From positions 186,001 through 250,000 of the IMG/VR virus record IMGVR_UViG_3300043418_000072: 64,000 nt of DNA. The stretch is one strand, 5' to 3'. Below are positions 6,289-47,840 of this stretch, piece after piece. Position 1 is the stretch's first letter; every line of letters starts with the position of its first letter. The notes below the pieces were generated by a model. The model saw only the letters and a program-made list of their open reading frames with translations. It was not told the DNA's origin and ran no database searches. The position numbers and the translations under genes are program-made.

Positions 6289-6606
6289 TTATTTGCAGTT
6301 TTTGTCTTTTGTTTTGTCGCAATCTTTGCTGCTATTGCTGCGCTGATGCCAGATGTTCCATGGCATATAGAAGTACGAAGGACTAGTTACAGTGCTAGGA
6401 CTTTCGGTAGTACTTTTGCTTGGAGAAGTAGTACTTTTTGCTGGTGCAGGAGCAGAACCTTTTGCTGGCGCTGCTGCATGACTTGAGCTTGCATGTCCAC
6501 CGGAACTAGCATGACCGCCGCCTCCATGTCCGCCTCCGCCACCACCTTTAGCTTGGGCAGTGCCGGTAATTGCAAGGACGATACAGAGTGCAATAATTTG
6601 TTTCAT
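6289..6606 (-). CDS. secreted Gly/Ser-rich hypothetical protein
   Basis: Signal peptide ending AQA, then GGGGGGHGGGGH. Confidence 0.7.
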   Translation of the reverse strand: MKQIIALCIVLAITGTAQAKGGGGGGHGGGGHASSGGHASSSHAAAPAKGSAPAPAKSTTSPSKSTTESPSTVTSPSYFYMPWNIWHQRSNSSKDCDKTKDKNCK

Positions 6607-6612
6607 GTGTGT

Positions 6613-6641
6613 ATTATATAACCAAAATCATTTATGGACAA
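6613..6641 (-). promoter_or_regulatory. sigma70 early promoter (copy 2), leaderless start
   Basis: TTGTCC-17-TATAAT; ATG lies 6 nt after the -10. Confidence 0.75.
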
Positions 6642-9494: not shown

Positions 9495-9520
9495 GCTGTA
9501 TTATAGCATGTGACCCATTA

Positions 9521-10738
9521 TCAGTCAACTATACCAAAATTTGCCCAATTTGCAGCACCTAAGCAAACCCAGCCCAATGGACCGCCTGCGCTAGGATTGG
9601 CATTAAACACAATATGCCCTTTGGTGCTAGAGAAGTTGGGAGGGGTGTCGCTTGCAGACATTTTTACGTTGCCCATACGCAGGTCATTGATTTGTGCTGA
9701 TCCATCTGTGTTAAGCACGATATTGCTGTGCTGGTTGCTGCCTAAAACAAGTGATTGATTTCTGGGTGTGCCAATGCGGCCCTGACCGTTGCGTTCTTTG
9801 CTAACAGTAATTTCAATATCTTCGTCCCATACTGCCAATGCTGCACTAGGTTCTAGAGTGTTAATACCGGTACGTTTGTTGCCAACATATAACGTGTCTG
9901 CAAGTTGAGTTTCGCCCGATACTTGCAATTCCTTTAGCATACCCAGCTTCTGTAAGTTACTTTCGGTAATGGTGTATCCAATGCGATTACCTTCGATTAC
10001 TACATTTTCATTTACAGTAATCTTGGATAAGTCTAGCCCGTCTGTTTTGATCTTGCTAAAAATAGTGTCGCTGAAACCTGCAAATAATTCACTATCCAGG
10101 CCTTGCTGCACTGCATTGGTAACTGAGCTAGCTAATTGTTTGTAGAACGCACTGTCCTCGTCTACCTTGCCTTTTACGTTGAGGTCGCCCTCAACAGTTA
10201 AATCCATTGTTACTAGATTGTTTTCAACAACTACCGCAGCATCAAGAATAGTAACAACACAATTAGTCGATTGGTCATCAATGCCGGTGGATGCAAAGTT
10301 TCTAATAATACCACCTGCAACTTGGTTACCCGAAATAGCCAAGTCTGACTGCTTGATACTTGCTGCACTAACACTGCCTTCTGGGAAGTCGAGGTTAAAG
10401 ATCTTGTCCTTAACTGCGGTTGCTAATGTTTGGTTAAATTGTCGGTTAACATCAAGGTCCTTGAGTTTCTTGTAAACAAGGTCTGCAATCTCTGCTTCAA
10501 GCTGCGCTTGGATGTTATTTACAACCGCGTTCACAGCCGAGTTAATACGTTTCTGCAACGCCTCGGTGTCAGTGGGGTCGAGTACTTGGTTTAATTTGTG
10601 TACAGCTAGATCGTAGTTGTACGTGTCTAGTCGAGCTCTAAGCTCATCTTTAACGAGGTCAGTAATTTGATTACCAACCTTTGTTTGTACGTCTTCTAAT
10701 ATGTTAGCTACTAACGAGTCGAATTTTGATAGTTCCAT
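9521..10738 (-). CDS. putative virion structural protein
   Basis: Coiled-coil N-terminus; beta-rich C-terminus ending GHIVFN..P..GGPLGWVC...W..FG, typical of fibre-like proteins. Confidence 0.55.
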   Translation of the reverse strand: MELSKFDSLVANILEDVQTKVGNQITDLVKDELRARLDTYNYDLAVHKLNQVLDPTDTEALQKRINSAVNAVVNNIQAQLEAEIADLVYKKLKDLDVNRQFNQTLATAVKDKIFNLDFPEGSVSAASIKQSDLAISGNQVAGGIIRNFASTGIDDQSTNCVVTILDAAVVVENNLVTMDLTVEGDLNVKGKVDEDSAFYKQLASSVTNAVQQGLDSELFAGFSDTIFSKIKTDGLDLSKITVNENVVIEGNRIGYTITESNLQKLGMLKELQVSGETQLADTLYVGNKRTGINTLEPSAALAVWDEDIEITVSKERNGQGRIGTPRNQSLVLGSNQHSNIVLNTDGSAQINDLRMGNVKMSASDTPPNFSSTKGHIVFNANPSAGGPLGWVCLGAANWANFGIVD

Positions 10739-14137: not shown

Positions 14138-15253
14138 ATGATTCCTTTTGATTTTTTCTATAATGTAATGAAAGATCACTTCTTTGATAAAACAGGGATC
14201 ATGTTAATTTATCCTCAATTTAATCAAGAGCGTATAACCTTTGTTTCTAAATTGCTAAACGATAATGCAAAGCCTGTTGTTATTTTTTATGACCAAGAAC
14301 CAATCGATGTTACTAAATTTTACGCCGAGGTATATAGACCTTATTCTCAATCTTTTAAGTCCCGTCAGGTCTTAGTAACTAGTGAGTATAGCACAGAGAG
14401 TGACAAATTGTGTAAGGATTATGAGTTGAAAGATGTCCAGTACTTCTATCACGCATTACTGTGCCATGAATGGTATCGATTGCATTGGTACGAAAACATA
14501 AATGTTAATACCGATTTTGACCGCGCATATATTACTTATAACAATTTAACATTAGACAAACGTTTGTATAGAGCAAACTTGATCATTGAGTTGCAAAAGA
14601 GAAATCTAACGTCCAATGGATACGTAAGTTACAACAATAGCAATTTTAGTGGGATAACTGCATCCACTAACACGTATGCAATGTTGCCAGTACAGCATAA
14701 ACTAAACATCCAATTGCACATGGATCTATTAGAAACCCAAATGATACTGGATACTCCTGCCCCAAGAGGAGAGTTGAGTGCCGCAGTTAATATAGGTGAT
14801 ATGCAAAAGGCATTTGTAAATCTAGTAACCGAAACAATCTTTTACGAGAACAAACAACATTTAACAGAAAAGATTTTCAAGCCCATTGTTGCAAAGATGC
14901 CATTCTTGTTGTTAGCAGGCGCCGGCTGCTTGTCGTACTTACGTAGCTACGGATTTAAAACCTTTGGAGAGTTTTGGGACGAAAGCTACGATGATATTAC
15001 AAACAGTGCTGATAGATTTAGTGCAGTGCTAGCCATACTCGAAGATCTATGCAATAAACCCCATGAAGAACTAGTGCAAATGAAGTTGGCAATGAGTGAA
15101 ATCCTAGAATACAATTTCAATCACTTTTACACAAACATGCGTCCCATTGTTGTTGACGAGTTTATAACCAAGCTAGGTGCGGCACTAACTGCAAATGGGG
15201 TAGATTATGATCCAGCTGACTTAGAGAACTTGAACTGTAGATTAACCTACTAA
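14138..15253 (+). CDS. phage glycosyltransferase-like protein (family member 2)
   Basis: LVTET...LTEKIFKPIVAKMPF...LRSYGFKTF...DESYD. Confidence 0.55.
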   Translation: MIPFDFFYNVMKDHFFDKTGIMLIYPQFNQERITFVSKLLNDNAKPVVIFYDQEPIDVTKFYAEVYRPYSQSFKSRQVLVTSEYSTESDKLCKDYELKDVQYFYHALLCHEWYRLHWYENINVNTDFDRAYITYNNLTLDKRLYRANLIIELQKRNLTSNGYVSYNNSNFSGITASTNTYAMLPVQHKLNIQLHMDLLETQMILDTPAPRGELSAAVNIGDMQKAFVNLVTETIFYENKQHLTEKIFKPIVAKMPFLLLAGAGCLSYLRSYGFKTFGEFWDESYDDITNSADRFSAVLAILEDLCNKPHEELVQMKLAMSEILEYNFNHFYTNMRPIVVDEFITKLGAALTANGVDYDPADLENLNCRLTY

Positions 15254-15256
15254 ATA
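15251..15256 (+). promoter_or_regulatory. late promoter TAAATA, leaderless start
   Basis: CTAAATA-CAGT-ATG(15261). Confidence 0.6.
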
Positions 15257-15260
15257 CAGT

Positions 15261-16418
15261 ATGAAAATTACAGACGTATTAGACGAAGCGGGTGCTGCCC
15301 CGATATATTATTTTGCCTACGGCATGTTAACAGATCCAGAATTGATGCCGGGTGCAGAATTTGTTGGACGTGCAGAGCTAAAGAATTTTGTCTTTGAGAT
15401 GTTTACCTATGCCAACGTATTCCCGTATCCTGGTGCCAGGGTAATCGGCAGCTTGTGGGCAATCGATAGACAGCTACTTGCTCAATTAGACCAAACTGAG
15501 GGATACCCAACCCTATACGATCGTAAAACGGTTCCGGTATTTGCCAATGGAGAGCGCCACGAAGCAGCGATTTACACAATGACTCCCGAGACTCGCGAGT
15601 ACATGCAAGGCACTGAACCAAACGATGCGTACATCGCTCGCATAGAGCGTGGGTATAACAATGCAGGAATTCCGTTACGTCAACTTGATGATGCACTAGA
15701 TGCCATTTACTCTGCACAGGATCTTGACGAGGGGTGGAAAGACTGGGCTGCTACAGGCGCCCTTGCTGCTGGAATGGCATTAGGTGGCGGAGCTGCTGAT
15801 GCTAAAGTTGCACCACATGCACAACCTAAAGCAACAGCCCAACACGTGGCTAAAGCTGCACACCCAGTTGCAGCTCAGTCCAAAACAGCACAACCAGAAA
15901 CCTACGGTGTTAGTATGAACACTGGTCCCGAACATACTCTACAACGTACTGCTCTTAGAGCCGGCATCAAAGGAGCAGAACTAGCACAATTCATGGCACA
16001 AACTCGCCACGAAAGTGCAGATTTTACACGTATGAAGGAGATTGGTGGAGCCAAGTACTTCCACAAGCGTTACGACCCCAAAGCCGCACCAGCTATGGCT
16101 AAGACCTTGGGCAATACACATGCAGGTGACGGAGTTAGGTATCACGGGCGCGGCTTTATTCAAATCACTGGACGAGACAACTATCGTATGGCCGGAAAAG
16201 CGTTGGGGTTGCCGTTAGAGCAAAAACCGGAGCTTGCTGCTAACCCAGAAATTGCTGCCAAGATTGCAGTGTGGTATTGGCAAACTCGCGTTAGACCTAA
16301 TGTACACAACTTCAATGACACTGCTACAGTCACTAAATATATTAACCCTGCGCTCAGAGGACTGCAAGATCGCTTGCACAACTTTAAAGAGTACACTGTA
16401 GCGATGAACATGCGATGA
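15261..16418 (+). CDS. gamma-glutamylcyclotransferase (AIG2-like) domain fused to a GH19 chitinase/lysozyme domain
   Basis: YYFAYG...LDQTEGYP..Y (GGCT); FMAQTRHES...YHGRGFIQITGRDNY...AVWYW...TKYIN (GH19). Confidence 0.88.
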   Translation: MKITDVLDEAGAAPIYYFAYGMLTDPELMPGAEFVGRAELKNFVFEMFTYANVFPYPGARVIGSLWAIDRQLLAQLDQTEGYPTLYDRKTVPVFANGERHEAAIYTMTPETREYMQGTEPNDAYIARIERGYNNAGIPLRQLDDALDAIYSAQDLDEGWKDWAATGALAAGMALGGGAADAKVAPHAQPKATAQHVAKAAHPVAAQSKTAQPETYGVSMNTGPEHTLQRTALRAGIKGAELAQFMAQTRHESADFTRMKEIGGAKYFHKRYDPKAAPAMAKTLGNTHAGDGVRYHGRGFIQITGRDNYRMAGKALGLPLEQKPELAANPEIAAKIAVWYWQTRVRPNVHNFNDTATVTKYINPALRGLQDRLHNFKEYTVAMNMR

Positions 16419-18232: not shown

Positions 18233-18772
18233 TTAGGTTATTCGGGGATTTCCGAATACAGTTTCAATTGCCATTCCGCTGTGCAGCTTGCGTTGGTAGG
18301 TTCCGTGGTCAACCATCTTTAAATGCGGATCATTGAATAAGAACTTCAGCAAGTGCTCGCTGTCTACCATTGGTACTGGTAAACGCTTTAGGGTTGTCCG
18401 CATAGCATCACTACTTTCAATCCAGAAACCTGGCTTGTTAAGCAACTGAGTCACTTTGTTTATCACACGGTCTTTGCTTTGTTTTTGTCCATCGTGTCCA
18501 ATACCTTGGATCTTATATCCAACCCATTGCTCGTTTGCTCTAGGACCACGATAAAATACACACGCATCAACTTCGGGGTCGGCGTCCCAGTCAATGACAT
18601 TCCAATCGCTTGGGATAACGTCTCTGATGCTGGTAACAAAACTGCCGTGTGCAGTAGAACTGTATGCGTTGTTAACTAGATCAATTAAATTGTCACCGAG
18701 CTCTTGCTTATCGGCATTGGATACAACTAATTCCCATAGATTTTTAGGCAGGCTAACTTCTGTAATACGCAT
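18233..18772 (-). CDS. hypothetical, probable internal head protein
   Basis: MRITE leader; ATAAATA 5 nt before ATG. Confidence 0.65.
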   Translation of the reverse strand: MRITEVSLPKNLWELVVSNADKQELGDNLIDLVNNAYSSTAHGSFVTSIRDVIPSDWNVIDWDADPEVDACVFYRGPRANEQWVGYKIQGIGHDGQKQSKDRVINKVTQLLNKPGFWIESSDAMRTTLKRLPVPMVDSEHLLKFLFNDPHLKMVDHGTYQRKLHSGMAIETVFGNPRIT

Positions 18773-18779
18773 CTAGTAT

Positions 18780-19094
18780 TTATAGCATCGTTCCGGTCTT
18801 GGGAAAACGGTAACGCACATCCTTGCCTATGCTAATAACACAAGCTGCTTCTCTGTCAAACTCAATAATAGTATATGAGCCAGTTTCCTTATTAAGGTAC
18901 AGAGCCATTGCAACGTCGCTCATATTTGAAGTTGTGCCCATTACCATTGGCTCTTCTCCGTACTTGTCTTTAAGATCCTTCATTAGGACTTTAACAGGAA
19001 AACACACAATCTTCTTGTTTGTTTCTACTGGTTTTTGTGCATAGGATGCAGCACATGTTAGGGCAAGACAGAGAGCAATAAGGTATTTAGACAT
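18780..19094 (-). CDS. secreted hypothetical protein
   Basis: Start reassigned to MSKYLIALCLAL (signal peptide); C...YGEEP...N.ETGSYT...AC. Confidence 0.7.
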   Translation of the reverse strand: MSKYLIALCLALTCAASYAQKPVETNKKIVCFPVKVLMKDLKDKYGEEPMVMGTTSNMSDVAMALYLNKETGSYTIIEFDREAACVISIGKDVRYRFPKTGTML

Positions 19095-20979: not shown

Positions 20980-21506
20980 CGTTTTTCTAATCCTAATTTG
21001 CAGAACACTTGCTGCACTGCGTTTGCTTGACTCACGCAATCTTCTAGCGCATTGTGCAAACCAACTTTGCCCTTAACACGTGGGTCACCGTGTACTTTAA
21101 ACAAGGTGCGTGAGTCTGCGATCTGCCAGAACTGCCAAGGTGTAGGCCATCCGTATTGCTCGTACAAGTTTTCAAGAATCGCAATGTCAAACACAGGACC
21201 TTGGCACCAAATGTTATTTACGCCCACTAAGAACTTGTTGAGCTGGCGATACATATCCTCTACCGGTATACGTCCTTCAGTACCCAGTGCTTCTTCACGC
21301 ACATCCTCGGCTTGCTGCATCCACCATTGCAGTGTATCTTCTTGGACCGTTCTACCACGGGCAATTTGTTCGTCTGCATCTGGACGGATATACAAACCCG
21401 GGCCCGGATCCTCCATTGTGTAGGGATTGAATTTAACTGCACCGAGAGTGAGAATTACACACCCCGGGCGAGTACCTAAAGTTTCTAAATCGAGCATTAC
21501 ATCCAT
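20976..21506 (-). CDS. DEDDh 3'-5' exonuclease (Rv2179c/exoribonuclease-like)
   Basis: MLDLETLG, WCQGPVFD, DSRTL, HNALED. Confidence 0.9.
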   Translation of the reverse strand: MDVMLDLETLGTRPGCVILTLGAVKFNPYTMEDPGPGLYIRPDADEQIARGRTVQEDTLQWWMQQAEDVREEALGTEGRIPVEDMYRQLNKFLVGVNNIWCQGPVFDIAILENLYEQYGWPTPWQFWQIADSRTLFKVHGDPRVKGKVGLHNALEDCVSQANAVQQVFCKLGLEKR

Positions 21507-21526
21507 GCTATATTATATGCTGCTAG

Positions 21527-22678
21527 TTATAGATTGTCAATTGACTTGCCAACCAAATAGAATTTACTGTAGCAACCGATTAGTCCCTTAGTGAAGTCAC
21601 CGCCGTTGCACCAACTGGTTGGAACTTGTTTTGACAAGTCGCTCAGACCATTAAGCCATTTTGAGTACGCAGGGATAGCATCGCTTCTAAACCAATACTC
21701 ATTTTCTTGGAACATGGGATTGTATGGTTTCTTTACTTTAAACAAGATATCACTGTTGTGGGGATAAATTAGATCGTTGACAATGGAGTAGTATTGTTCT
21801 GGTACCAATGCGCCATACTTACTGTGATCAAGTTTATCCCTTAGGTCAGGGTGTAAATCAAACCATGCACAAATGACCTGTGCTTGCTTTGCTAGCATTT
21901 CGGGTAAGTCGGGAGTCCAATAAAACAACTCGTCGTTTTCCCAATAATGGTCGTTGGTTTGATTAAAGTCCCCCACGCTGATACTTAACTGTATGTCTAA
22001 GAAATACAAGTAGTAGGCATTGTCTTTGTAACAGATTCGTGGCTTGTCAATGCCGTGAATAAACCCGACTCTACGACCTGCATCGTATTGCTGTAGGTAA
22101 TTCTTTGTGGCATTGTGCAGCAAGATGTTCTTGGGCATAGACGAGTTATAACGCACACCTGGGTTGAAATCATCAATCCAATTTGGGTTATTGTAATAGT
22201 CTAAGAGATCATCAGTGTAGTCGTATAGAGTTACTTTTGTTCTAGTATCTATGTCTAGTTTCTTAAGCATTGGTAACGCTTGAAAATCAATTTCACTGCG
22301 CAAATTCCATGCTTCGTCGCTGGCACTCTTAGTGGACTCAGTGCCCTTAAACGGACCGAAGATCAATATCTCATCAATGAAGATGTTGTTGTCGTGAAAT
22401 GCACGTAGGATAGTGTAGCTATCAATGCCGCCGCTGAAGCAAAGCACAAGGTAATCATACTTGTCCCTAAGTTGCTGCGCCCTAATGCGATACAACTCAC
22501 TTAGTGAAATATCAACAGGTTTGGTCCAGTTGTAGTTTGAAAACGCCGACTCGTTGAAATTCCAGTGAGGATGGATGCCGGACTTTGAGTGTTCAGTGAT
22601 AGCATCAATTTTTCTGTAGAACTTCTCGGGTCCTACCTGATAAAATCCACGTTTATCGTATTCAATCGAATTTGACAC
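21527..22678 (-). CDS. PP-loop (adenine nucleotide alpha-hydrolase) protein
   Basis: LCFSGGIDS PP-loop; GIDKP. Confidence 0.7.
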   Translation of the reverse strand: MSNSIEYDKRGFYQVGPEKFYRKIDAITEHSKSGIHPHWNFNESAFSNYNWTKPVDISLSELYRIRAQQLRDKYDYLVLCFSGGIDSYTILRAFHDNNIFIDEILIFGPFKGTESTKSASDEAWNLRSEIDFQALPMLKKLDIDTRTKVTLYDYTDDLLDYYNNPNWIDDFNPGVRYNSSMPKNILLHNATKNYLQQYDAGRRVGFIHGIDKPRICYKDNAYYLYFLDIQLSISVGDFNQTNDHYWENDELFYWTPDLPEMLAKQAQVICAWFDLHPDLRDKLDHSKYGALVPEQYYSIVNDLIYPHNSDILFKVKKPYNPMFQENEYWFRSDAIPAYSKWLNGLSDLSKQVPTSWCNGGDFTKGLIGCYSKFYLVGKSIDNL

Positions 22679-24220: not shown

Positions 24221-24473
24221 CGTCGTCGGTGGTTTCTGATAATTCATCCATACCTTCACCGGTAGTGTGTTGGTATGTTTTGTCGCCTACTATCCATTCG
24301 TCAGTCCAGAAGCGTTGGCTGTTACTGGACTCGGGTGGCGGAAGTAGCGCAAGCATAGTGAATACTTGCTCACGCTCTTCGCCTTCTAGAATTCGAGTAG
24401 TTTTGAGCAAGCCGCAACGTTTTAGAAACGCACGAGCTTCCTCTTTGGTCTTGAACTCTTTGGGTTTGATCAT
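24213..24473 (-). CDS. hypothetical protein
   Basis: Translationally coupled ORF. Confidence 0.65.
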   Translation of the reverse strand: MIKPKEFKTKEEARAFLKRCGLLKTTRILEGEEREQVFTMLALLPPPESSNSQRFWTDEWIVGDKTYQHTTGEGMDELSETTDDDE

Positions 24474-24781
24474 TGATCAGCTTCAAGTTTGACCTGAAGT
24501 GGGAATCCGTTGTTACGTGCAAGCAGTGTGACTTCAACACCTTTTTGCTCTGCAATTTCGTAAGGGAGAGTTGCAACCACTGCCGAACCTTCTTCGTGGA
24601 TTCGCATAGTCAATTGCTCAGAACTGTCATTGTCGTGATTGAAAACAGCCTTCAGCGTCTCGACAACAAATTCCATAGTAGTGGTATTGTCGTTAACGTA
24701 AATCACCTTGTACAAACTTGGTGGCTTAACATCGAAACGTGGTTGGATTTTAATTTGTTGACGAGTTTTGGTATTTGCCAT
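24470..24781 (-). CDS. clpS: N-end-rule adaptor ClpS
   Basis: PPSLYKVIYVNDNTTTMEFVVETL...IHEEGSAVV...EIAEQK...FPLQV. Confidence 0.95.
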   Translation of the reverse strand: MANTKTRQQIKIQPRFDVKPPSLYKVIYVNDNTTTMEFVVETLKAVFNHDNDSSEQLTMRIHEEGSAVVATLPYEIAEQKGVEVTLLARNNGFPLQVKLEADQ

Positions 24782-24834: not shown

Positions 24835-25281
24835 TTACTTTTTGAAAGTAATTGCAATGGATTTTGGTTTCTTTTCTTCCGGAACAACTAGTTCCAGTTG
24901 AACAGAAAGGATACCGTTTTCCACAGTAGCGCCACGAACCTCTACGTTGTCTGCCAACGTAAAATCGCGAACGAAGTTGCGGTTACTGATTCCTTGGTGC
25001 AAGTATGTTGGAGCAGCCGAATCGGCATCCTTGACCTTTTCACCAGTTACAGTAAGAACATTGTCTGCTAGCTCTACGTTGATTTCGCTTTCTGAGAATC
25101 CAGCAACTGCAACTTCGACCACAAAATGGGTTTCGTTAACTTGAACGATATTGTGTGGAGGGTAGTTGCCGCTTTTGCTGTTTGCAAAGGTGCGATTCAA
25201 TTCCTCAAACATGCGGTCAAAGCCAATGGCTGAACGATGTAGGGAAGGTAGGTCTAGAGTACGGATGTTGAATTGTGTCAT
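24835..25281 (-). CDS. ibpA: small heat shock protein Hsp20 (IbpA-like)
   Basis: IGFDRMF, YPPHNI, AVAGF, YLHQGIS.R.F.R.F.LA, NGIL. Confidence 0.95.
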   Translation of the reverse strand: MTQFNIRTLDLPSLHRSAIGFDRMFEELNRTFANSKSGNYPPHNIVQVNETHFVVEVAVAGFSESEINVELADNVLTVTGEKVKDADSAAPTYLHQGISNRNFVRDFTLADNVEVRGATVENGILSVQLELVVPEEKKPKSIAITFKK

Positions 25282-25342
25282 GTTATTCTCCTATTAAGCA
25301 AGTTATGACGTTTAAAATGTAGCCCGATTATCGGCACTACAT
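25277..25342 (-). promoter_or_regulatory. ROSE-like RNA thermometer in the hsp20 5' UTR
   Basis: CUUGCU pairs with AGGAG (bulged G); GUCAU pairs with AUGAC over the start codon; upstream hairpin AUGUAG..CCGAU-A-AUCGG..CUACAU. Confidence 0.65.
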
Positions 25343-25351: not shown

Positions 25352-25648
25352 TTATACAGACAAAAAGTCAGTGATCAAATTATTTTGGGCATCTACAACT
25401 TCAATACGTTTCCTGCTGCTGCTATGGTATTGTGGTTTGTAGGTTAGTAAGAAAAAGCTGATACTTGCTGGATCCTCGAGAGTGAGATACAAGTATCTGC
25501 CGTCGTTTTTAAGCGTGTACGGCTGCTGATAACGACTGCCCCATCGCTGCATATCCGTTTGAATAAAGGATATTGCAGTTTGGTTAACGCCAACAGGATT
25601 TCCTGGAAAAATGGTTTCGTCAGCAGGTAATCGAAACCTAACTTGCAT
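25352..25648 (-). CDS. hypothetical protein
   Basis: TGATG-coupled to the rpsU stop; start MQVRFRLP. Confidence 0.6.
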   Translation of the reverse strand: MQVRFRLPADETIFPGNPVGVNQTAISFIQTDMQRWGSRYQQPYTLKNDGRYLYLTLEDPASISFFLLTYKPQYHSSSRKRIEVVDAQNNLITDFLSV

Positions 25649-25881
25649 CAGTACAGTTTCTTTGGCAAGCTCTCTGCTTGCAGTTTCTTTTGCCAACGGC
25701 GCTTGGCTTGTGCTGCTGCCTTCTTGCGCTTGGTAGTTGGCTTTTCGTAAAACTCACGTTCGCGAAGTTCTTGCAACTTGCCACTCTCCATGATTTTCTT
25801 TTTAAATTTGCGCAAGGCTTTTTCAACGTTGTCGTTTTGCACAACTACGCTGCTGCCATAAAGTTTCATTCTTTCGTTCAT
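25648..25881 (-). CDS. rpsU: ribosomal protein bS21
   Basis: VEKALRKFKKK...LQELREREFYEKPTTKRKK. Confidence 0.93.
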   Translation of the reverse strand: MNERMKLYGSSVVVQNDNVEKALRKFKKKIMESGKLQELREREFYEKPTTKRKKAAAQAKRRWQKKLQAESLPKKLY

Positions 25882-25888
25882 TTTTATC

Positions 25889-27091
25889 CTATTCTATAAA
25901 ATTAGGTGGGTCGTTATATTTAACCACTTTGTCAGTAATCTCTATCTTTTTAAAACCCTGCTTTTTAATTTCAGTTAGGGTGTACATATATGGTGTAAGA
26001 GTACGCTCTAAAATACTCTTTAGTCCACGGGCACCAACTTTTTGCTGCACTGCTAAGTCGGCTACTGCTTCAATGGCTTCCGGTGTAAACAGTAATTCCA
26101 CTTCGTCTGACGAGAAGTAAAACTTCATCTGTGCAAGCAAGTTGTTCTTAGGTTCAGTTAGAATCTTAACAAAGTCATCCTTGCTTAGTTCGTCAATTTG
26201 CACAGAGATTGGGAAACGTCCAGTAAACTCCGGTATCATCCCAAACTTTTGGAAATCGTCCGGGGTCACTTCTGTAACATCAATTTGGTCTTCATTGGCT
26301 GAGTTGAATCCAATACTGGTTCCTCGCTGCCTACGGTCGACAATCTTAGGTAGTCCAGCAAAGGCACCGCCGGCAATAAACAAGATCTTGCTGGTATCAA
26401 TTTCCACTTGATCCATTGCTGGATGCTTCTTGCCACCATTTACACTAACCTTGCACTTGGTACCTTCTACTAGCTTGAGTAGAGCTTGTTGTACTCCTTC
26501 GCCGCTTACGTCACGAGTTAGGCTAGCTGATTCACTTTTACGTGCAATTTTGTCTACTTCATCAAGGAAGATAATACCTTGCTCACAACGGGCAACATCG
26601 TATTCTGCTGCTGCTAGCAAGCCCGAGATGATGCTTTCAACATCATCCCCTACATATCCTGCTTCGGTTAGTGTAGTTGCATCTGCTACAACAAAGGGCA
26701 CGTTTAGATAACGTGCGATTGTTTTGGCTAGTAGTGTTTTACCTGAGCCAGTTGGGCCGTGAATTAGAATGTTTGACTTTTCTAGTTCAACTGAACTTTC
26801 GAAGAAGATGCGTTTGTAGTGATTAACCACTCCCACACTAATTGCAATTTTGGCAGCGTCTTGGCCGATAATGTATTCGTCTAAGTGCTGTTTGATTTTG
26901 ATTGGATCAAGTGCCTTGCCAATTTTCTTATCCTTGCGAATATGATCGTTAGCTTCTTTGTTAATGATGTTGCTACAAAGCGTGATACATTCATTACAAA
27001 TGCCCGCGTCGTTGGCTACAATTAACTTCTCAACTTCATTACGGCTTTTACCACAGAAGTTACAGTGGATCGGTTGAATGGTTTCGCTCAT
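25889..27091 (-). CDS. clpX: ClpX AAA+ unfoldase
   Basis: CNFCGK..ICNEC zinc-binding domain, [39 protein letters not shown] loop, GARGL. Confidence 0.97.
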
Positions 27092-27440
27092 GGGCTCTTT
27101 TGATAAAATATTCTAATACGTTAGTGTATTTACGATCATTGTTGATAAAGTTCTTTGGCCCGTAATGGTATGTTTTTTCTGACCCAACAAATAGGTCTTT
27201 GATTGGACTTAGCTCGGTAGCAGCGGTGTTTACTACGATTGCATCTACTTGCCCTGCTGCCTTGGTAAGCCAATTAACGTCATCTAACTCTGCACTGTAC
27301 AGATACACATTAAATGCTTCGTTATGTCCTGCGCATAAAAATGCCAATGTTTCAACGTCAACTGGATCGACGTCAATTAGCAATACTGAATGATTTGGAT
27401 CTTCTACAAAATCCGGCGGGGTAATAAAGTTAGTTGTCAT
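27060..27440 (-). CDS. conserved hypothetical protein
   Basis: ITPPDF N-terminus; coupled ORF. Confidence 0.7.
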   Translation of the reverse strand: MTTNFITPPDFVEDPNHSVLLIDVDPVDVETLAFLCAGHNEAFNVYLYSAELDDVNWLTKAAGQVDAIVVNTAATELSPIKDLFVGSEKTYHYGPKNFINNDRKYTNVLEYFIKRAHERNHSTDPL

Positions 27441-29080
27441 TTGCTCTTTAGATATTCGCGAATCTGCTCTTGTTCGCTTTCGCTTAGTGTTTCAACATCG
27501 TATTCGCCGCTATTGATTTTGTCAATTAGGTACTTGATGTATTCTTCATTGTAAGTGTAGCTATCAGTTGCTGCTTTGTCAACTTCAATCCACTTAACGC
27601 CATTAAACTTAAACAGCCTAGCTGGCAAGAAGTCTACACGCAGATACATGTCACCTTTGTTTGCAGATTCTGGAAACTTAGTTCCAAAGTCTGCGTTAGC
27701 TGCTTTAGCACGATCAATATTGTCTGCATGGGCATCTAGGTCAGGTACCCACGAGTGACTGAGAGTTTTGATACGAGTATTTGGATCAATGTGCTCTTCA
27801 ACTACTTCTTTCATTGGGCCGGTGTACTCAGGGGGAGTAATGTAGTCACCCGGACGCTCGATTTCGTCAATGCCCATTGTTAGGATCTCTGGAGAAGATT
27901 GCTGGATGCCTAATCCAGACTCAATGGCTATGTCATCTTCGGATTCTTTGGTATCAACTGCGGCCTTAAATGCTTCCACAGACTTGATAAGTTGCGCCAC
28001 TTGTTCATCTGTTAACGGCCCATCATCTTCATCATACTCTGGTGCCATCACCTCATCTGCAACCACTTCACGCTTATGTACCATCGGTGGCAGGTTTGAA
28101 AAATGAACAAAGGGTTTCTTTAGGTACGCAAACAAATCCACTTCCTCTGTAGTGGTAGACTCAGCAGGGACACTCTGAACTATGGGCTCAGCGTCCAACA
28201 CCGTGTAATCGTCTACTGCAATATGTTCCTCTACATCGGGAGTGGGCTCGTGGGGTTCTTCGACTGCAACATGACTGTTAGCGGTCTCCGTATATTTGTT
28301 CACCTCGTCAGGTGTGTGTTCCTCCCCACGTGACCATTTTAGGCTTTGTTGCGCTGCTAAAATTAGCACAAGAGCAAGCGGATCAAACACCGCGACAATC
28401 ATCATGATGACTAACCGTACTGCTTTTTCAAGGATGTTAGCATCTGGGTTGTCCCCGTAGATCAACGCCGCGATGTATTTAATTGGACCGACTTCACTTT
28501 CAACTTTGCGGAATTCAGCCCGCAAAGGCGCTGCCTCTTCGCCAAGGGCGGTAATAGTTTTCTGTTCGGCTTGGATCTCGGATTGAAGTCTTGTGCGTTC
28601 TTTTTGTTGACTACGTCTAATTGCAACAGCTTTGTCGGCACCTTTTTCATCACTGCTTCGAGCCAACACCTGGTCCAAAGCTTCATCCATTTGTTTAATC
28701 GCCTTCCGGTTCGCATCAATATTATCCTTTGAGATTTTGATTTTTTCATCATAGATAGCAACTTTAGCCATGCTATCACCGGATATCATGCTTTGGTCCG
28801 AGTGCGCTTTACTTAGGAAACCAAAGATGCCCATACTAGTTAGTACCATTAGGAATGCCACGGCCGGCACAAGGTATAACTTGTAGGTCCAGCTAGCACG
28901 TTCCCAATTGAGTTTTAGCCAAACTGCGGCAGTGATTTTGCCTACTCCGAGCACTGCACCCATAATAACAATGGGCCAAAAAGCCGCAGAGAAGATAGCA
29001 GTAAGACCTACAATGCTGTAGTATTCTGCAACGGCACTAATAATTAGTGCTACAAGAAGTGTGAAATATCCGAATATCAT
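27437..29080 (-). CDS. membrane-anchored coiled-coil protein with an acidic linker
   Basis: Three N-terminal TMs, coiled coil, TM ending FDPLA, C-terminal FG.KFP...GD..LRVD..P.RLFKF; ATAAATA upstream. Confidence 0.75.
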   Translation of the reverse strand: MIFGYFTLLVALIISAVAEYYSIVGLTAIFSAAFWPIVIMGAVLGVGKITAAVWLKLNWERASWTYKLYLVPAVAFLMVLTSMGIFGFLSKAHSDQSMISGDSMAKVAIYDEKIKISKDNIDANRKAIKQMDEALDQVLARSSDEKGADKAVAIRRSQQKERTRLQSEIQAEQKTITALGEEAAPLRAEFRKVESEVGPIKYIAALIYGDNPDANILEKAVRLVIMMIVAVFDPLALVLILAAQQSLKWSRGEEHTPDEVNKYTETANSHVAVEEPHEPTPDVEEHIAVDDYTVLDAEPIVQSVPAESTTTEEVDLFAYLKKPFVHFSNLPPMVHKREVVADEVMAPEYDEDDGPLTDEQVAQLIKSVEAFKAAVDTKESEDDIAIESGLGIQQSSPEILTMGIDEIERPGDYITPPEYTGPMKEVVEEHIDPNTRIKTLSHSWVPDLDAHADNIDRAKAANADFGTKFPESANKGDMYLRVDFLPARLFKFNGVKWIEVDKAATDSYTYNEEYIKYLIDKINSGEYDVETLSESEQEQIREYLKSK

Positions 29081-29151
29081 AGTGTGTATTTATTGGGGTT
29101 AACCAACAGTTTACATTATGATATCTGTAAAGTCAAAAGTTTTGATTAAAT

Positions 29152-29358
29152 TTAGGTGGTCCAGGGTCGGCCTTGCACTAGGCCTCCGACGTTTGGATTG
29201 TCTACAACATCGTCGCCGCTGTACTGTGTTGGCAATTGGGTGATATCATATACATCACGCGGGTTACCTACTGCTGCGCGGTCAGTTGCTGCAAGGTCAA
29301 GTTTAGCCTTTTGCTTTGCTTCTTTTGTGGATAGGGTTGAGATTCCGTTTTGTGACAT
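29152..29358 (-). CDS. small late protein
   Basis: NGISTL...LPTQY...GLVQGRPW; CTAAATA 4 nt before ATG. Confidence 0.7.
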   Translation of the reverse strand: MSQNGISTLSTKEAKQKAKLDLAATDRAAVGNPRDVYDITQLPTQYSGDDVVDNPNVGGLVQGRPWTT

Positions 29359-29370
29359 ACAGTATTTAGC

Positions 29371-30107: not shown

Positions 30108-30512
30108 TTACTTAACCAATGCGTAGGGCTTGTCCCAACGGCCCACGTTTACATCCACATACCAACCAACGTTGAAGTAGTCGGTCTGGATGTCGCTTTT
30201 GTCCCAATTGCCGTCATTCATGACTGCAAAGATTTTACGCAAAAACACAAGAGCAACACCATCAAAGTGTTCCTGAAACCAGTAAGGATTCACGTCCAGT
30301 GAGCCTTCTGCTTTGCGCCAATCGCGCCCGTGTGCTTTAGATTCGCTAACTCGGTTCGCGTTACCAATGAAGTCAATTTCACCTTGGCTAATGTTAAGCA
30401 CAAGGGTAGAGTGATGACGTACTGCAATGCTGGCCTTGACCTTGTACTCTTTGCAAATTGCACGAAGTTGTGGGGCCAATTTTGCTTTAAGTTCTTGACT
30501 AACGTATGCCAT
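30108..30512 (-). CDS. conserved early phage protein
   Basis: MAYVSQE...DKSDIQTDYFNVGWY; AGGAG RBS; early promoter upstream. Confidence 0.8.
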   Translation of the reverse strand: MAYVSQELKAKLAPQLRAICKEYKVKASIAVRHHSTLVLNISQGEIDFIGNANRVSESKAHGRDWRKAEGSLDVNPYWFQEHFDGVALVFLRKIFAVMNDGNWDKSDIQTDYFNVGWYVDVNVGRWDKPYALVK

Positions 30513-30544
30513 CTTCTACTCCTGTTTTGCTTTGCTATGTAGTT

Positions 30545-30573
30545 ATTATAGCAAGAAATCCATTTCGGGTCAA
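30545..30573 (-). promoter_or_regulatory. sigma70 early promoter (copy 3)
   Basis: GGTTGACCCGAAATGGATTTCTTGCTATAAT, 17-bp spacer. Confidence 0.8.
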
Positions 30574-32949: not shown

Positions 32950-33102
32950 TTAGATAAAAATTACCAACATAACCAATCCCATTATAACAAACAGGCCGAT
33001 GGTGTCGGCAATGTCCTCGCCCTGCCCATATTTGTAGTTGTCCAGTGGACGAATACAGTCCTGAAATTCTTTTGAATTTAAGTAAGCGATTAGTTTCTTC
33101 AT
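32950..33102 (-). CDS. small membrane protein (50 aa), leaderless
   Basis: Hand-translated MKKLIAYLNSKEFQDCIRPLDNYKYGQGEDIADTIGLFVIMGLVMLVIFI. Confidence 0.6.
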   Translation of the reverse strand: MKKLIAYLNSKEFQDCIRPLDNYKYGQGEDIADTIGLFVIMGLVMLVIFI

Positions 33103-33108
33103 GTATGT

Positions 33109-33137
33109 ATTATAACCGAGAATCCATTATCAGTCAA
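33109..33137 (-). promoter_or_regulatory. sigma70 early promoter (copy 5)
   Basis: TTGACT-17-TATAAT; ATG lies 6 nt after the -10. Confidence 0.75.
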
Positions 33138-34283: not shown

Positions 34284-34737
34284 ACCAAATTTCCTTAAAG
34301 CCTTCTTCTTCAGAGGGCATTTCCAAATTATCAATCATGCTGCGCATAACATGCTCGGGAATTGTTTTACCCAGGCGGCTTTCTAAACGACGAGCATGTT
34401 CTTCGGGCTCAGGAGTTCTAAACACCACTGCAATCTTTTCGTACTTGGGCAACATGGCCAATTTCTTTGCACGGCTTTTTGCTGAGGTGTTGGTTTGATC
34501 CCAAATCACGTCTGTGCCATTTGCTTGGCAGATCAACACTTGGTTATCCATCAAGCGCATAGCAATAGGCGCATATTCTTTGAACACTTCGTTGTAAGTC
34601 TTGCCTTCTTTTTCAGCATACTCGTCAATGAAGCGATCGCTGCTAACTACAGGCATGTCCTTAGTCCAGTCTTGCGACTTGATCCAAGTGCTCTTGCCGC
34701 TAGCGGGCACTCCGATTAACATATACAATTTGTTCAT
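34276..34737 (-). CDS. P-loop polynucleotide kinase-like (AAA_33) protein
   Basis: LIGVPASGKST, SSD, WDQTN...R; leaderless start MNKLYML. Confidence 0.88.
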   Translation of the reverse strand: MNKLYMLIGVPASGKSTWIKSQDWTKDMPVVSSDRFIDEYAEKEGKTYNEVFKEYAPIAMRLMDNQVLICQANGTDVIWDQTNTSAKSRAKKLAMLPKYEKIAVVFRTPEPEEHARRLESRLGKTIPEHVMRSMIDNLEMPSEEEGFKEIWYV

Positions 34738-34743
34738 GTGTGT

Positions 34744-34772
34744 ATTATAGCAAGAAACCCATTTCGGGTCAA
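34744..34772 (-). promoter_or_regulatory. sigma70 early promoter (copy 6)
   Basis: GGTTGACCCGAAATGGGTTTCTTGCTATAAT. Confidence 0.8.
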
Positions 34773-35679: not shown

Positions 35680-36211
35680 TTTCTCGTTTTAACGCCGATG
35701 CAATTACCTCATCCATGCTAACTGCAATTACTCCTGTGGCATCCATTCCAACATCTTGCATACGATACTTTTCCATGCCAGTTGTGCCGCCATGCAAGTG
35801 ACCATACAAGTGGACGCTACCTCGGTGCATCTGGTCCCATTCTAAGAATGGAAAATGTGACATCACAACCATTGTGCCGTTGTATTGGATGGCCAAGTAC
35901 TTGTGTACTTCTTCAAAAGATTCAAAGAAGTGCTTGTCCATCAATGTTTTACGGTCATGGTTGCCTTCAACCAAGATCTTTTTACCGTTCAACCGGTTCA
36001 TGATCTTGCTTGCGTCGAATCCGCCCATAAATGCCACGTCACCCAAGATGTAGGTGGTGTCTTCTGGTCCAATCAACTCGTTCCATTCTTTAATCATTGC
36101 TTCAGTCATGTAAGCAATGTCGTCTTTAAATCGTGCGCGAGTCACTGGACAGAACTTTGTGATGTTTCTGTGGCCGAAGTGTAAGTCGCTAGTTACCCAA
36201 GTTTTTGTCAT
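35663..36211 (-). CDS. calcineurin-like metallophosphoesterase
   Basis: SDLHFGH, LGD, GNHD, SHFP, GHLH. Confidence 0.92.
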   Translation of the reverse strand: MTKTWVTSDLHFGHRNITKFCPVTRARFKDDIAYMTEAMIKEWNELIGPEDTTYILGDVAFMGGFDASKIMNRLNGKKILVEGNHDRKTLMDKHFFESFEEVHKYLAIQYNGTMVVMSHFPFLEWDQMHRGSVHLYGHLHGGTTGMEKYRMQDVGMDATGVIAVSMDEVIASALKREIKTHH

Positions 36212-36231
36212 ATTTGTATTTTACTCGATTA

Positions 36232-36447
36232 TTAGTTAGTTGTCAACTGTGCAGTTTGTTTAAGTAGGATAGCAATGTACTCGCCGGGTTGCTCAGGATT
36301 GCCATAACTGTTGTGGGACACTTTGTCATAGCATGGGCCGCAGAAGTAACCGCTGATGTTGTAGTAGCCCCGGAGACTCCAGAAGCTACGCTCACGTTCT
36401 AGAGATTTTTCCGTGTAACCACAATTGGTGCATGTTGCATAAGCCAT
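36232..36447 (-). CDS. small zinc-finger protein
   Basis: CTNC...CGPC; start reassigned to MAYATC. Confidence 0.6.
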   Translation of the reverse strand: MAYATCTNCGYTEKSLERERSFWSLRGYYNISGYFCGPCYDKVSHNSYGNPEQPGEYIAILLKQTAQLTTN

Positions 36448-36655: not shown

Positions 36656-36982
36656 TTAGTGAGTGTTCAATGCGGGCTTGTTGCCGTTAATCAATTCACG
36701 CTCAACGCTGTGTGCTGGCTTGCGACCACGCACAACATCAACCAACAACACTGCAAACGCTTCTGCACCGTGTTCGCGAATGCTTTCGCACAGGGCCCAG
36801 TCTTTGTTTTCAGTGAGTGCGCGGCGCACATGCTTTTGAAAGCGAACTTTAAGGGCTTTGCGAACTTGGTTACCACAGACAGTGATACCAATGTAGCTTT
36901 CATTTGTGTTAGTGTTCACTAACATATAGACAGCATGTTTGGTATCTTGTCTGCGTTTACGGGTAACTGTTGTTTTCTGCAT
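36656..36982 (-). CDS. stand-alone GIY-YIG nuclease domain protein
   Basis: AVYML...SYIGIT...R..KH...E..LI...P.LN; leaderless early gene. Confidence 0.8.
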   Translation of the reverse strand: MQKTTVTRKRRQDTKHAVYMLVNTNTNESYIGITVCGNQVRKALKVRFQKHVRRALTENKDWALCESIREHGAEAFAVLLVDVVRGRKPAHSVERELINGNKPALNTH

Positions 36983-36988
36983 GTATGT

Positions 36989-37017
36989 ATTATAGCAAGA
37001 AAACCATTTCGGGTCAA
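36989..37017 (-). promoter_or_regulatory. sigma70 early promoter (copy 7)
   Basis: GGTTGACCCGAAATGGTTTTCTTGCTATAAT. Confidence 0.8.
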
Positions 37018-47804: not shown

Positions 47805-47840
47805 ACAGATATTTATCTAATAATCTGTACTATAGGCATT

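What the first reader, a model, noticed from the sequence alone, without database searches (positions are those of the whole stretch)
25648..25881. Phage bS21 together with frequent leaderless gene architecture
Seen: ATG lies only 4-6 nt after the -10 or late box, with no room for an SD, at many genes. After TATAAT: 6606, 9494, 21506, 33102, 34737, 36982, 48551. After TAAATA: 885, 15261, 18772, 29080, 29358, 47804, 48598, 53418. Other genes have strong AGGAG sites. Established: bS21 contacts the anti-SD region and modulates initiation, and leaderless mRNAs initiate on 70S ribosomes without an SD. Inference: the phage may run two translation-initiation classes and swap bS21 to shift between them or to escape host shut-off.
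Basis: partly seen in the sequence, partly recalled or inferred. Interest (0 to 1): 0.6.

Follow-up and report, generated by a model that had tools for sequence, protein, structure and literature searches.

The report
Phage bS21 plus leaderless-type genes
An uncultured 354-kb freshwater jumbo phage carries a genuine ribosomal protein bS21 gene and, separately, about thirty genes whose ATG sits exactly where transcription should start. Nothing in the evidence ties the two features together.

Summary
Both parts of the observation hold. The ORF at 25648-25881 (-) is a full-length bS21 (Pfam 61 bits; aligns with E. coli bS21 residues 6-65). It sits in a ClpX-bS21-orf98-Hsp20-ClpS module that is syntenic with Pseudomonas phage PA5oct.

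All 15 listed ATGs lie 4-6 nt after TATAAT or TAAATA. Genome-wide, TTGAC-N17-19-TATAAT-N5-6-ATG occurs 15 times, against 0.02 in shuffles. The leadered early promoters carry ATA(G) at the very position where the leaderless ones carry ATG.

The genome encodes a gp55-like late sigma factor, so TAAATA is plausibly a T4-type late promoter. The TAAATA+4-6-ATG peak recurs in three other freshwater jumbo genomes and in homologues down to about 41% identity. It is absent from PA5oct and from T4.

No transcription start site (TSS) data could be obtained, because the RNA runs were held only as contigs.

The proposed link, a bS21 swap that shifts between initiation classes, is not supported:
- PA5oct has the same bS21 module without the leaderless signal.
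- Leaderless-type genes are both early and late, whereas bS21 is late.
- Published work indicates bS21 supports SD pairing and that its loss favours leaderless mRNA.

Phage bS21 is already known. The clade-wide leaderless promoter architecture appears undescribed.

The parts
25648..25881 (-). Phage bS21 (rpsU homologue), 77 aa. Weak SD (aGGAtaaaaATG). Starts 7 nt after the clpX stop. Its TGA stop overlaps the ATG of the next ORF.
   Evidence: Pfam PF01165 E=7e-17. PDB bS21 chains E~1e-12. Sequence read. Alignment with phage and proteobacterial bS21.
25917..25922 (-). TAAATA box 35 nt upstream of the bS21 ATG, inside the 3' end of clpX. Candidate late promoter for bS21.
   Evidence: Sequence. 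Relatives carry TAAATA either 4-7 nt or 24-41 nt before their bS21 ATG.
25889..27091 (-). ClpX-like AAA+ unfoldase with an N-terminal C4 zinc finger.
   Evidence: Pfam AAA_2 4e-30, zf-C4_ClpX 1e-12. Syntenic with PA5oct gp229.
25352..25648 (-). orf98, no family match. Start overlaps the bS21 stop (TGATG), which suggests translational coupling.
   Evidence: No Pfam or PHROG match. PA5oct has a hypothetical gene at the same position.
25313..25342 (-). Hairpin followed by a T run after orf98. Terminator-like, closing the clpX-bS21-orf98 unit.
   Evidence: Read from the sequence. Inference only.
24835..25281 (-). Hsp20 small heat-shock protein, SD-led (taGGAGaataacATG).
   Evidence: Pfam HSP20 1e-19. 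Sequence.
24470..24781 (-). ClpS adaptor.
   Evidence: Pfam ClpS 6e-26.
27437..29092 (-). 547-aa membrane/virion-like protein with a late box: TAAATA (29087-29092), CACACT, ATG (29080). The best-conserved leaderless-type late gene. Heads the tightly packed run of genes down to bS21.
   Evidence: Homologues down to about 41% identity keep TAAATA+4-7 nt+ATG, with the ATG aligned to residue 1. The G001-G003 orthologues are all leaderless-late.
9492..9528 (-). Early leaderless-type promoter/start: TTGACT-N17-TATAAT-ACAGC-ATG. Endonuclease gene 8487-9494.
   Evidence: Kept in relatives at 96-98% identity and seen again in some at 66-68% (L004, L018, L028, L012).
21504..21540 (-). Early leaderless-type promoter/start: TTGACA-N17-TATAAT-ATAGC-ATG. 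Exonuclease gene 20976-21506.
33100..33137 (-). Early leaderless-type promoter/start: TTGACT-N17-TATAAT-ACATAC-ATG. 50-aa ORF.
34735..34772 (-). Early leaderless-type promoter/start: TTGACC-N17-TATAAT-ACACAC-ATG. ATPase/PNK-like gene 34276-34737.
36209..36246 (-). Phosphoesterase gene 35663-36211.
   Evidence: The orthologues in G001-G003 are SD-led.
36980..37017 (-). Early leaderless-type promoter/start: TTGACC-N17-TATAAT-ACATAC-ATG. GIY-YIG homing-endonuclease-like gene 36656-36982.
48549..48600 (.). Divergent pair with only 46 bp between the two ATGs. The 48551 (-) exonuclease gene sits behind TTGACT-N17-TATAAT-TGCAAC. The 48598 (+) gene sits behind TAAATA-TTTTG. There is no room for leaders.
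6604..6641 (-). TATAAT-ACACAC-ATG with a poor -35 (TTGTCC). 105-aa ORF.
883..896 (-). Late leaderless-type start: TAAATA-CTGAT-ATG. Deoxyribonucleotidase-like gene.
   Evidence: The G002 orthologue is leaderless-late.
15251..15263 (+). TAAATA-CAGT-ATG before the endolysin-like gene. The TAA is the stop of the upstream gene, so coupling is an alternative.
18770..18782 (-). TAAATA-CTAG-ATG, 179-aa ORF. The upstream gene's stop lies 7 nt away.
29356..29368 (-). TAAATA-CTGT-ATG, 68-aa ORF. The upstream gene's stop lies 12 nt away. Orthologues are SD-led.
47802..47815 (-). TAAATA-TCTGT-ATG before homing endonuclease gene 47124-47804.
53416..53429 (-). TAAATA-TCTAC-ATG, 148-aa ORF.
   Evidence: (G002 and G003 orthologues are leaderless-late).
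30510..30573 (-). Comparator, a leadered early cassette: TTGACC-N17-TATAAT-AACTAC-ATAGCAAAGCAAAACAGGAGTAGAAG-ATG.

Best explanation
Two real but separate features are present.

(1) The bS21 gene. The ORF is a genuine, full-length phage bS21. It belongs to a conserved late-expressed module, clpX-bS21-orf98 | hsp20 | clpS, which this uncultured freshwater jumbo phage shares with Pseudomonas phage PA5oct. It is transcribed from TAAATA-type late promoters by host RNA polymerase carrying a phage gp55-like sigma factor. By inference from published work on another phage bS21, the protein enters the host 30S platform next to the anti-SD. Most likely it keeps or re-tunes canonical SD-dependent initiation while late proteins are made in bulk.

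(2) The promoter architecture. The phage builds its promoters in two forms. In the leadered form, the +1 A starts a short leader that carries AGGAG. For early genes this leader reads ATAGCAAGCAAAACAGGAG followed by a few more nt and then the ATG, about 23-26 nt in all. For late genes it is about 12-16 nt. In the leaderless form, the same +1 A is the A of the ATG, giving a 5'-AUG mRNA that a 70S ribosome or a 30S-IF2-fMet-tRNA complex can start on without an SD. About 30 of roughly 474 genes are of this form. That is about a third of exact early promoters and nearly half of gene-proximal late boxes.

The leaderless form is a trait of the freshwater clade, not of bS21-bearing phages in general.

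Shown here: the gene's identity, the synteny, the motif statistics and the conservation. Inferred: the TSS positions, ribosome incorporation and the direction of any bS21 effect.
For: bS21 identity.

Module synteny with PA5oct. Hsp20 and Clp neighbours of phage bS21 are already reported in PMC9723584.

Late control:
- gp55-like sigma, phrog_12791, E=4e-76; T4 gp55 matches the same ORF.
- TAAATA lies before bS21 in most relatives.

Leaderless architecture:
- Exact positions.
- Distance histograms are bimodal: early at d=5-6 and 29-32, late at d=4-6 and 17-22.
- Shuffle tests.
- Of 46 exact early promoters, 15 have ATG and 16 have ATA(G) at the same 6th/7th nt.
- The -1 base is a pyrimidine in 26/31 leaderless-type genes against 115/263 SD genes, p=1.8e-5, as expected of a TSS.
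- All such starts are ATG and first in frame. 27 of 31 have no strong-SD alternative start downstream.
- PHROG alignments begin at residue 1-2.
- Homologue N-termini align at offset 0.
- The same peak appears in G001, G002 and G003.
- PA5oct and T4 lack it.
- The divergent pair at 48551/48598 leaves only 46 bp between ATGs.

Direction of the bS21 effect: PMC10491246. PMC6375957 reports that the pelagiphage bS21 is incorporated into E. coli 70S ribosomes.
Against: No TSS was measured. The only RNA data were assembled metatranscriptome contigs. They run across the promoters at DNA-like flat depth.

Gene calls come from my own crude codon-usage script.

Eight of 18 late sites lie no more than 15 nt after an upstream same-strand stop, so termination-reinitiation could explain those.

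The host is unknown. A beta-type tmRNA hints at Betaproteobacteria, so the host's capacity for leaderless translation is also unknown.

Independence of bS21 from the leaderless trait rests mainly on one with-bS21, without-leaderless genome (PA5oct). All four large freshwater relatives tested (G001-G004) also carry bS21, so no leaderless-rich genome lacking bS21 was available as the reciprocal control.
Confidence: 0.6

Rival explanations
1. The phage runs two initiation classes and uses its own bS21 to shift host ribosomes between them, or to keep translating after host shut-off.
For: bS21 lies at the anti-SD, and variants or absence of it change mRNA selection (PMC7797042 and PMC9976891; PMC9578407). 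The phage bS21 family has its own conserved N-terminal extension and an LPKKLY tail. In about a third of relatives the bS21 gene is itself leaderless-type. All four leaderless-rich genomes carry bS21.
Against: PA5oct has the same module and no leaderless peak. Leaderless-type genes are early as well as late, while bS21 is late. Orthologues toggle between the two modes. Published data say that loss of bS21, not gain, favours leaderless mRNA. No IF3-like or S1-like gene accompanies bS21.
Confidence: 0.1
2. The late-type sites are not leaderless. TAAATA is partly the stop codon and AT-rich junction of the upstream gene. These ATGs would then be read on polycistronic late mRNAs by termination-reinitiation or SD-independent (bS1/A-rich) initiation.
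For: Eight of 18 late sites have an upstream same-strand stop within 15 nt. At 15261 the TAA of the box is that stop. The genes are tightly packed. RNA contigs span the junctions.
Against: Ten of 18 late sites have gaps of at least 22 nt or divergent neighbours. No other stop-containing hexamer is enriched at d=4-5. The same hexamer also sits 17-22 nt before SD-led genes, behaving as a promoter. A gp55-like sigma factor is present. The early class has full -35/-10 promoters in intergenic gaps of 20-237 nt.
Confidence: 0.15
3. The phage bS21 does not act on initiation choice at all. As part of a ClpX/ClpS/Hsp20 module, it replaces bS21 that is lost or degraded from host ribosomes during infection, or counters a host response. 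The result is simply to maintain ribosome number and activity.
For: The conserved neighbourhood of protein-quality-control genes (PMC9723584). The core is very close to cellular bS21. bS21 is an exchangeable, late-assembling protein (PMC6375957; PMC10491246).
Against: No direct evidence. Neighbouring genes alone are weak evidence. This overlaps with part (1) of the best explanation rather than excluding it.
Confidence: 0.2

Closest known systems
Phage-encoded bS21 (pelagiphage HTVC008M; Bacteroidetes-infecting lake phages; Pseudomonas phage PA5oct gp228)
   Same: Same Pfam family and the same small basic two-helix protein. Late-type expression context. Hsp20 and Clp neighbours are already reported for many bS21 phages (PMC9723584; PMC6375957). 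PA5oct has the same ClpX-bS21-hyp-...-Hsp20-ClpS order.
   Different: This one is of proteobacterial type (REFYEKPTT core, C-terminal LPKKLY; about 50% identity to Halothiobacillus/Thiotrichales bS21). It is not the Flavobacteria type with the anti-SD-sequestering tail. Its genome shows the leaderless promoter architecture, which PA5oct lacks.
Leaderless mRNAs of phages and bacteria (lambda cI from PRM; mycobacterial and Caulobacter leaderless transcriptomes)
   Same: ATG at the predicted +1, no SD, ATG-only starts and a pyrimidine at -1, as in known leaderless genes.
   Different: Here it is predicted, not mapped. It is frequent in a lytic jumbo phage with a probable proteobacterial host, used with two different sigma specificities, and freely interchanged with SD-led forms among orthologues. 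phiKZ dRNA-seq found no leaderless transcripts (PMC8244752). AR9 UTRs are 26-491 nt (PMC5312081).
T4 late promoters (TATAAATA read by gp55 with gp33/gp45)
   Same: A -10-only, A/T-rich box containing TAAATA. A gp55-like sigma is encoded.
   Different: In T4 the box lies 13-34 nt before the ATGs, never 4-6 nt. Here the core is usually nTAAATAy rather than the full TATAAATA (14 full copies). gp33 and gp45 homologues were not sought.
bS21-dependent specialised ribosomes (Flavobacterium johnsoniae bS21/anti-SD sequestration; Francisella bS21 paralogues)
   Same: They show that changing or removing bS21 can change which mRNAs are initiated.
   Different: None of these involves leaderless mRNAs or a phage-supplied protein. 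No functional data exist for this phage.

Membership tests
Ribosomal protein bS21 (Pfam PF01165) | Profile match above the curated cut-off | tested here: met
   61.3 bits against a cut-off of 27, E=7e-17, profile positions 2-53 of 55.
Ribosomal protein bS21 (Pfam PF01165) | Full-length similarity to bS21 chains seen in solved ribosomes | tested here: met
   E. coli chain residues 6-65 of 71, E=1e-12. 38 distinct bS21 chains matched at E up to 0.001.
Ribosomal protein bS21 (Pfam PF01165) | Binds the 30S platform beside the anti-SD | not testable with these tools
   Inferred from homology only. Incorporation has been shown for a different phage bS21 (PMC6375957).
Leaderless mRNA genes | Transcription start at or within a few nt of the start codon | tested here: inconclusive
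   Promoter geometry puts +1 on the A of the ATG, and the -1 pyrimidine bias fits. RNA runs were available only as contigs and show no ends.
Leaderless mRNA genes | AUG start, no Shine-Dalgarno, first start in the frame | tested here: met
   All about 31 candidates start with ATG. SD duplex energies are weaker than -3.5 kcal/mol in nearly all. Most are the first ATG after the upstream in-frame stop.
Leaderless mRNA genes | The start codon is the true N-terminus | tested here: met
   Homologue alignments begin at residue 1 with offset 0. PHROG matches begin at residue 1-2.
T4-type late transcription | Phage gp55-family sigma factor | tested here: met
   phrog_12791 E=3.8e-76 at G000:C1:13854-14678. 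T4 gp55 matches the same ORF at E=7e-6.
T4-type late transcription | TATAAATA -10-type box without a -35, at a fixed distance from gene starts | tested here: met
   The TAAATA core is enriched at d=4-6 and 17-22 before ORF starts in four genomes. The full 8-mer is rare (14 copies).
T4-type late transcription | gp33 co-activator and gp45 sliding clamp | not tested
   Not searched.
bS21-driven specialised ribosomes | A change of bS21 alters mRNA choice | not testable with these tools
   Needs reporters, ribosome mass spectrometry or structures.

The most novel reading that the evidence does not exclude
The phage bS21, with its clade-specific N-terminal extension and LPKKLY tail, remodels the host 30S platform. 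The ribosome could then accept both the phage's 5'-AUG mRNAs and its short-leader SD mRNAs while discriminating against host messages. That would make the leaderless architecture and the bS21 gene two halves of one takeover strategy in this freshwater jumbo-phage clade.
Probability: 0.1. Interest if true: 0.85.

Novelty: new variant of a known kind. Interest (0 to 1): 0.5.

Why it matters
Phage bS21 is the commonest virus-encoded ribosomal protein, and its role is still unknown.

This genome does not explain that role, but it offers a clean natural system. Near-identical promoters occur with and without a 23-26-nt SD leader. Orthologues flip between the two forms. In some relatives the bS21 gene is itself leaderless-type.

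If the starts are confirmed, a whole clade of abundant freshwater jumbo phages would express about 7% of its genes as leaderless mRNAs from both host-sigma and phage-sigma promoters. That is unusual for phages of probable proteobacterial hosts and is not seen in T4 or PA5oct. It would also improve gene-start calling in such genomes. The matched leadered and leaderless cassettes are ready-made reporters for testing whether phage bS21 changes initiation preference.

Tried and rejected
RNA evidence. One search found three freshwater metatranscriptome runs holding the region. Laying 6,000 letters (window 31350-37349) on X3, X4, X8 and the DNA run X1 gave only assembled contigs. X3 contigs cross the 33102 and 36982 promoters at flat, DNA-like depth, and no 5' ends can be read. 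A loose end at 34743 is a branch into another copy of the repeated promoter cassette, not a transcript end.

Identity by DNA. megablast of 8 kb against cultured phages found nothing. tblastn of the 808-aa protein also found nothing. The nearest cultured relative was found through DnaB (PA5oct, 45% amino-acid identity).

With/without-bS21 comparison inside the clade. This was not possible, because all four large freshwater relatives tested (G001-G004) have bS21.

Other translation-initiation genes. No IF3_C domain and no S1 domain is encoded in the genome.

A at +4 as a leaderless signal. It is 61% in leaderless-type genes against 47% in SD genes, which is not significant.

Site 31591. My regex flagged it as an early leaderless site, but it has only TAAACT and no convincing -35, so I dropped it.

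Literature. Searches found no paper linking phage bS21 to leaderless mRNAs, and none describing leaderless genes behind T4-type late promoters.

Not run. Structure or complex prediction and the large protein search were skipped, because the family assignment was already unambiguous.
Full report
What the window is. The window is bases 186001-250000 of a single 354,098-bp virus record. It has 43.5% G+C. My crude codon-usage caller gives about 474 genes, 423 of them on the - strand. The window itself has no tRNA genes, but the genome has 48, plus a tmRNA. Public runs that hold the sequence are freshwater, with a few wastewater, metagenomes and metatranscriptomes. So this is an uncultured freshwater jumbo phage. 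It has no nucleotide match among cultured phages. By DnaB-like helicase, its nearest cultured relatives are Pseudomonas phage PA5oct and its kin (45% amino-acid identity), followed by Agrobacterium phage Atu_ph07 and a Vibrio jumbo phage.

The bS21 gene. The ORF 25648-25881 (-) encodes 77 aa. It matches Pfam Ribosomal_S21 at 61 bits against a cut-off of 27. It aligns with E. coli bS21 from solved ribosomes over residues 6-65 of 71. An alignment shows a proteobacterial-type core (ALRKFKKK...REFYEKPTTKRKK), a phage-clade N-terminal extension of 7-12 residues, and a conserved LPKKLY tail comparable to the proteobacterial RxRLY. The nearest cellular sequences recovered were gammaproteobacterial (Halothiobacillus, Piscirickettsiaceae, Methylophaga) at about 50% identity; that search is pattern-limited. 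Thousands of metagenomic proteins of 77-82 aa form the phage family.

The module around bS21. The gene starts 7 nt after the stop of a ClpX-like gene and has only a weak SD (aGGAtaaaaATG). Its TGA overlaps the ATG of an unknown 98-aa ORF. A hairpin with a T run follows, then an SD-led Hsp20 gene, another hairpin, and ClpS. PA5oct has the same order: ClpX, bS21, hypothetical, QueD-like, Hsp20, ClpS. Hsp20 and Clp genes were already reported as frequent neighbours of phage bS21 (PMC9723584). The gene and its neighbourhood are therefore real but already known.

The leaderless-type architecture: positions. Thirteen lie on the - strand, which is the coding strand for about 90% of genes.

Early class. 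The early sites are full sigma70-type promoters, for example ggTTGACccgaaatgggtttcttgcTATAATacacacATG. Genome-wide there are 46 exact TTGAC-N17-19-TATAAT sites, nearly all on the - strand (42 with the narrower N16-18 spacer, all on the - strand). Fifteen have ATG at the 6th/7th nt after the -10. Sixteen have ATA(G) at that same position and continue as a conserved leader, ATAGCAAGCAAAACAGGAG-N5-8-ATG. The two forms are thus the same promoter. They differ in whether the expected +1 A begins an SD-bearing leader of about 23-26 nt or begins the start codon.

Late class. TAAATA lies 4-6 nt before ATGs of long ORFs 25 times. A second hump at 17-22 nt precedes SD-led genes.

Statistics. In 100 dinucleotide shuffles the full early pattern occurs 0.02 times, against 15 observed. 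TATAAT-N5-6-ATG is 22 against 9.1+-2.9. TAAATA-N4-6-ATG is 28 against 17.0+-3.8, although both hexamers are under-represented overall. Without any motif chosen in advance, TAAATA at d=4-5 and TATAAT at d=6 rank at or near the top of the hexamers before first-ATGs, next to SD hexamers.

Are these ATGs the true starts and the likely TSS?
- All candidates use ATG. Nearly all are the first ATG after the upstream in-frame stop and lack an SD. 27 of 31 have no strong-SD alternative start within 60 codons.
- PHROG alignments begin at residue 1-2 for the phosphoesterase, PNK-like, exonuclease and homing-endonuclease genes.
- The -1 base is a pyrimidine in 26/31 candidates against 115/263 SD-led genes (p=1.8e-5). 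That is the known preference at bacterial transcription start sites.
- The divergent pair 48551(-)/48598(+) has only 46 bp between its ATGs.

Comparative evidence. For the 547-aa gene at 29080, homologues from IMG/VR down to about 41% identity keep TAAATA, 4-7 nt and an ATG aligned to residue 1, while the surrounding sequence diverges. For the early endonuclease gene at 9494, close relatives keep the arrangement. Some relatives at 66-68% identity have a different TTGACA-N17-TATAAT/TATACT followed by 5-6 nt and ATG, while others are leadered.

Late transcription machinery. The genome encodes a gp55-like late sigma factor (phrog_12791, E=4e-76; T4 gp55 matches the same ORF). This makes TAAATA a plausible T4-type late promoter core.

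How general is the leaderless pattern? Three other complete freshwater jumbo genomes (G001-G003; 355-400 kb; 37-41% G+C) show the same sharp TAAATA peak at d=4-6, with 27, 23 and 27 first-ATG ORFs against 20 here. PA5oct shows none; only SD hexamers are enriched there. In T4 the TATAAATA boxes lie 13-34 nt before ATGs and never 4-6 nt. Orthologue by orthologue, the state is conserved for some genes (29080, 885, 53418). It switches to SD-led in others (36211, 29358, 34737).

Limits.
- I could not measure a TSS. The single reads call returned contigs only. Those from the best RNA run cross the promoters at flat depth and may include DNA or read-through.
At 15261 the TAA of the box is that stop. 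Termination-reinitiation on a polycistronic mRNA is therefore a fair alternative for those eight, but not for the other ten or for the early class.
- The gene set is my own rough call.

Is bS21 connected to the leaderless class? Evidence bearing on the link:
- PA5oct has the same bS21 module without the leaderless signature.
- Leaderless-type genes occur under both early and late promoters. They encode nucleases, homing endonucleases, a phosphoesterase, a PNK-like ATPase, a nucleotidase, an endolysin-like protein and a virion/membrane protein. There is no temporal class for bS21 to switch.
- bS21 is itself late. In this phage a TAAATA box lies 35 nt upstream, and the gene also sits downstream of the 29080 late box in a tightly packed run. 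In relatives the bS21 ATG is preceded by TAAATA either 4-7 nt away (about 18 of 57 distinct contexts, so bS21 is itself leaderless-type there) or 24-41 nt away with an SD. Late expression agrees with PMC9723584.
- The published lambda cI leaderless-mRNA structures report that ribosomes lacking uS2 and bS21 favour leaderless mRNA and that bS21 supports the anti-SD (PMC10491246). The classical finding cited by PMC6375957 is that bS21 is needed to bind natural, SD-led mRNAs.
- No IF3-like or S1-like gene is encoded.
- For the link: all four leaderless-rich genomes encode bS21, and the phage bS21 family has distinctive termini. Neither point is specific.

Most likely mechanism. Host RNA polymerase with host sigma70 (early), and with the phage gp55-like sigma (late), initiates at the A seven nucleotides after TATAAT or five to six after TAAATA. 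Where that A is followed by TG, the transcript is a 5'-AUG mRNA. It is translated without an SD, by 70S ribosomes or by 30S-IF2-fMet-tRNA complexes. Elsewhere a short leader supplies AGGAG. The frequent switching between forms among orthologues suggests that both work adequately in the host. The compact form also saves space and lets mobile genes such as homing endonucleases carry a minimal self-contained expression signal. The phage bS21, made late together with ClpX, ClpS and Hsp20, most plausibly enters 30S subunits and sustains or tunes canonical initiation during bulk late synthesis. That step is inferred.

Novelty. Phage bS21, its late expression and its Clp/Hsp20 neighbours are already known. 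I found no report of leaderless genes behind T4-type late promoters, and none of a jumbo-phage clade with this dual promoter design. phiKZ and AR9 TSS maps report none. I rate the whole finding as a new variant of a known kind, of moderate interest, pending TSS mapping.

Noticed in passing
L359:609-999 (-) = G000:C1:179608-179998, about 6 kb before the window start: The phage encodes a permuted tmRNA. ARAGORN gives the tag ANDSQFLMVA. It matches Rfam beta_tmRNA at 110 bits (gathering score 84). This hints at a betaproteobacterial host.
   Followed up: partly
L360:395-466 (-) = G000:C1:174391-174465; tRNA cluster at G000:C1:280156-302664: The genome has 48 tRNA genes outside the window, plus one tRNA with anticodon CTA, which looks like an amber suppressor (Rfam tRNA 66.7 bits). 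By eye, two of the four tRNA-Met(CAT) genes have an A1/A72 mismatch at the top of the acceptor stem, reminiscent of initiator tRNAs.
   Followed up: partly
window 36656-36982 (-) and 47124-47804 (-): Two GIY-YIG-type homing-endonuclease-like genes each carry their own leaderless-type promoter, one early and one late. This is a minimal self-contained expression signal on probable mobile genes.
   Followed up: no
window 30545-30573, 34743-34772, 36988-37017, and outside the window at -2848, -3337: The early promoter cassette (tggTTGACCcgaaatgg.tttcttgcTATAAT) is repeated almost identically at many loci. This makes assembly graphs branch: a loose end at 34743 in run X4 continues into the leadered version of the cassette.
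   Followed up: partly
window 24782-24834 (-): ClpS has no SD and is not leaderless-type. A TATAAT at 24829-24834 is followed by a hairpin (cgtagggc...gccctacg) and then an AT-rich 17 nt before the ATG. How it initiates is unclear.
   Followed up: no
window 57364-59790 (-): An 808-aa protein with a weak endolysin-like central domain has no tblastn match in about 50,000 cultured phage records.
   Followed up: no
G004 (IMG/VR record of 524,565 bp, reached through L048): A 525-kb relative carries two separate bS21 genes, at 63744-63896 (+) and 471943-472095 (-).
   Followed up: no
PA5oct NC_071039.1, orthologue of window gene 47841-48551: PA5oct lacks the genome-wide signal. Even so, its exonuclease orthologue has TATAAT-ACAGGCT-ATG with the ATG aligned at offset 0, so a few leaderless-type genes may exist there too.
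   Followed up: no
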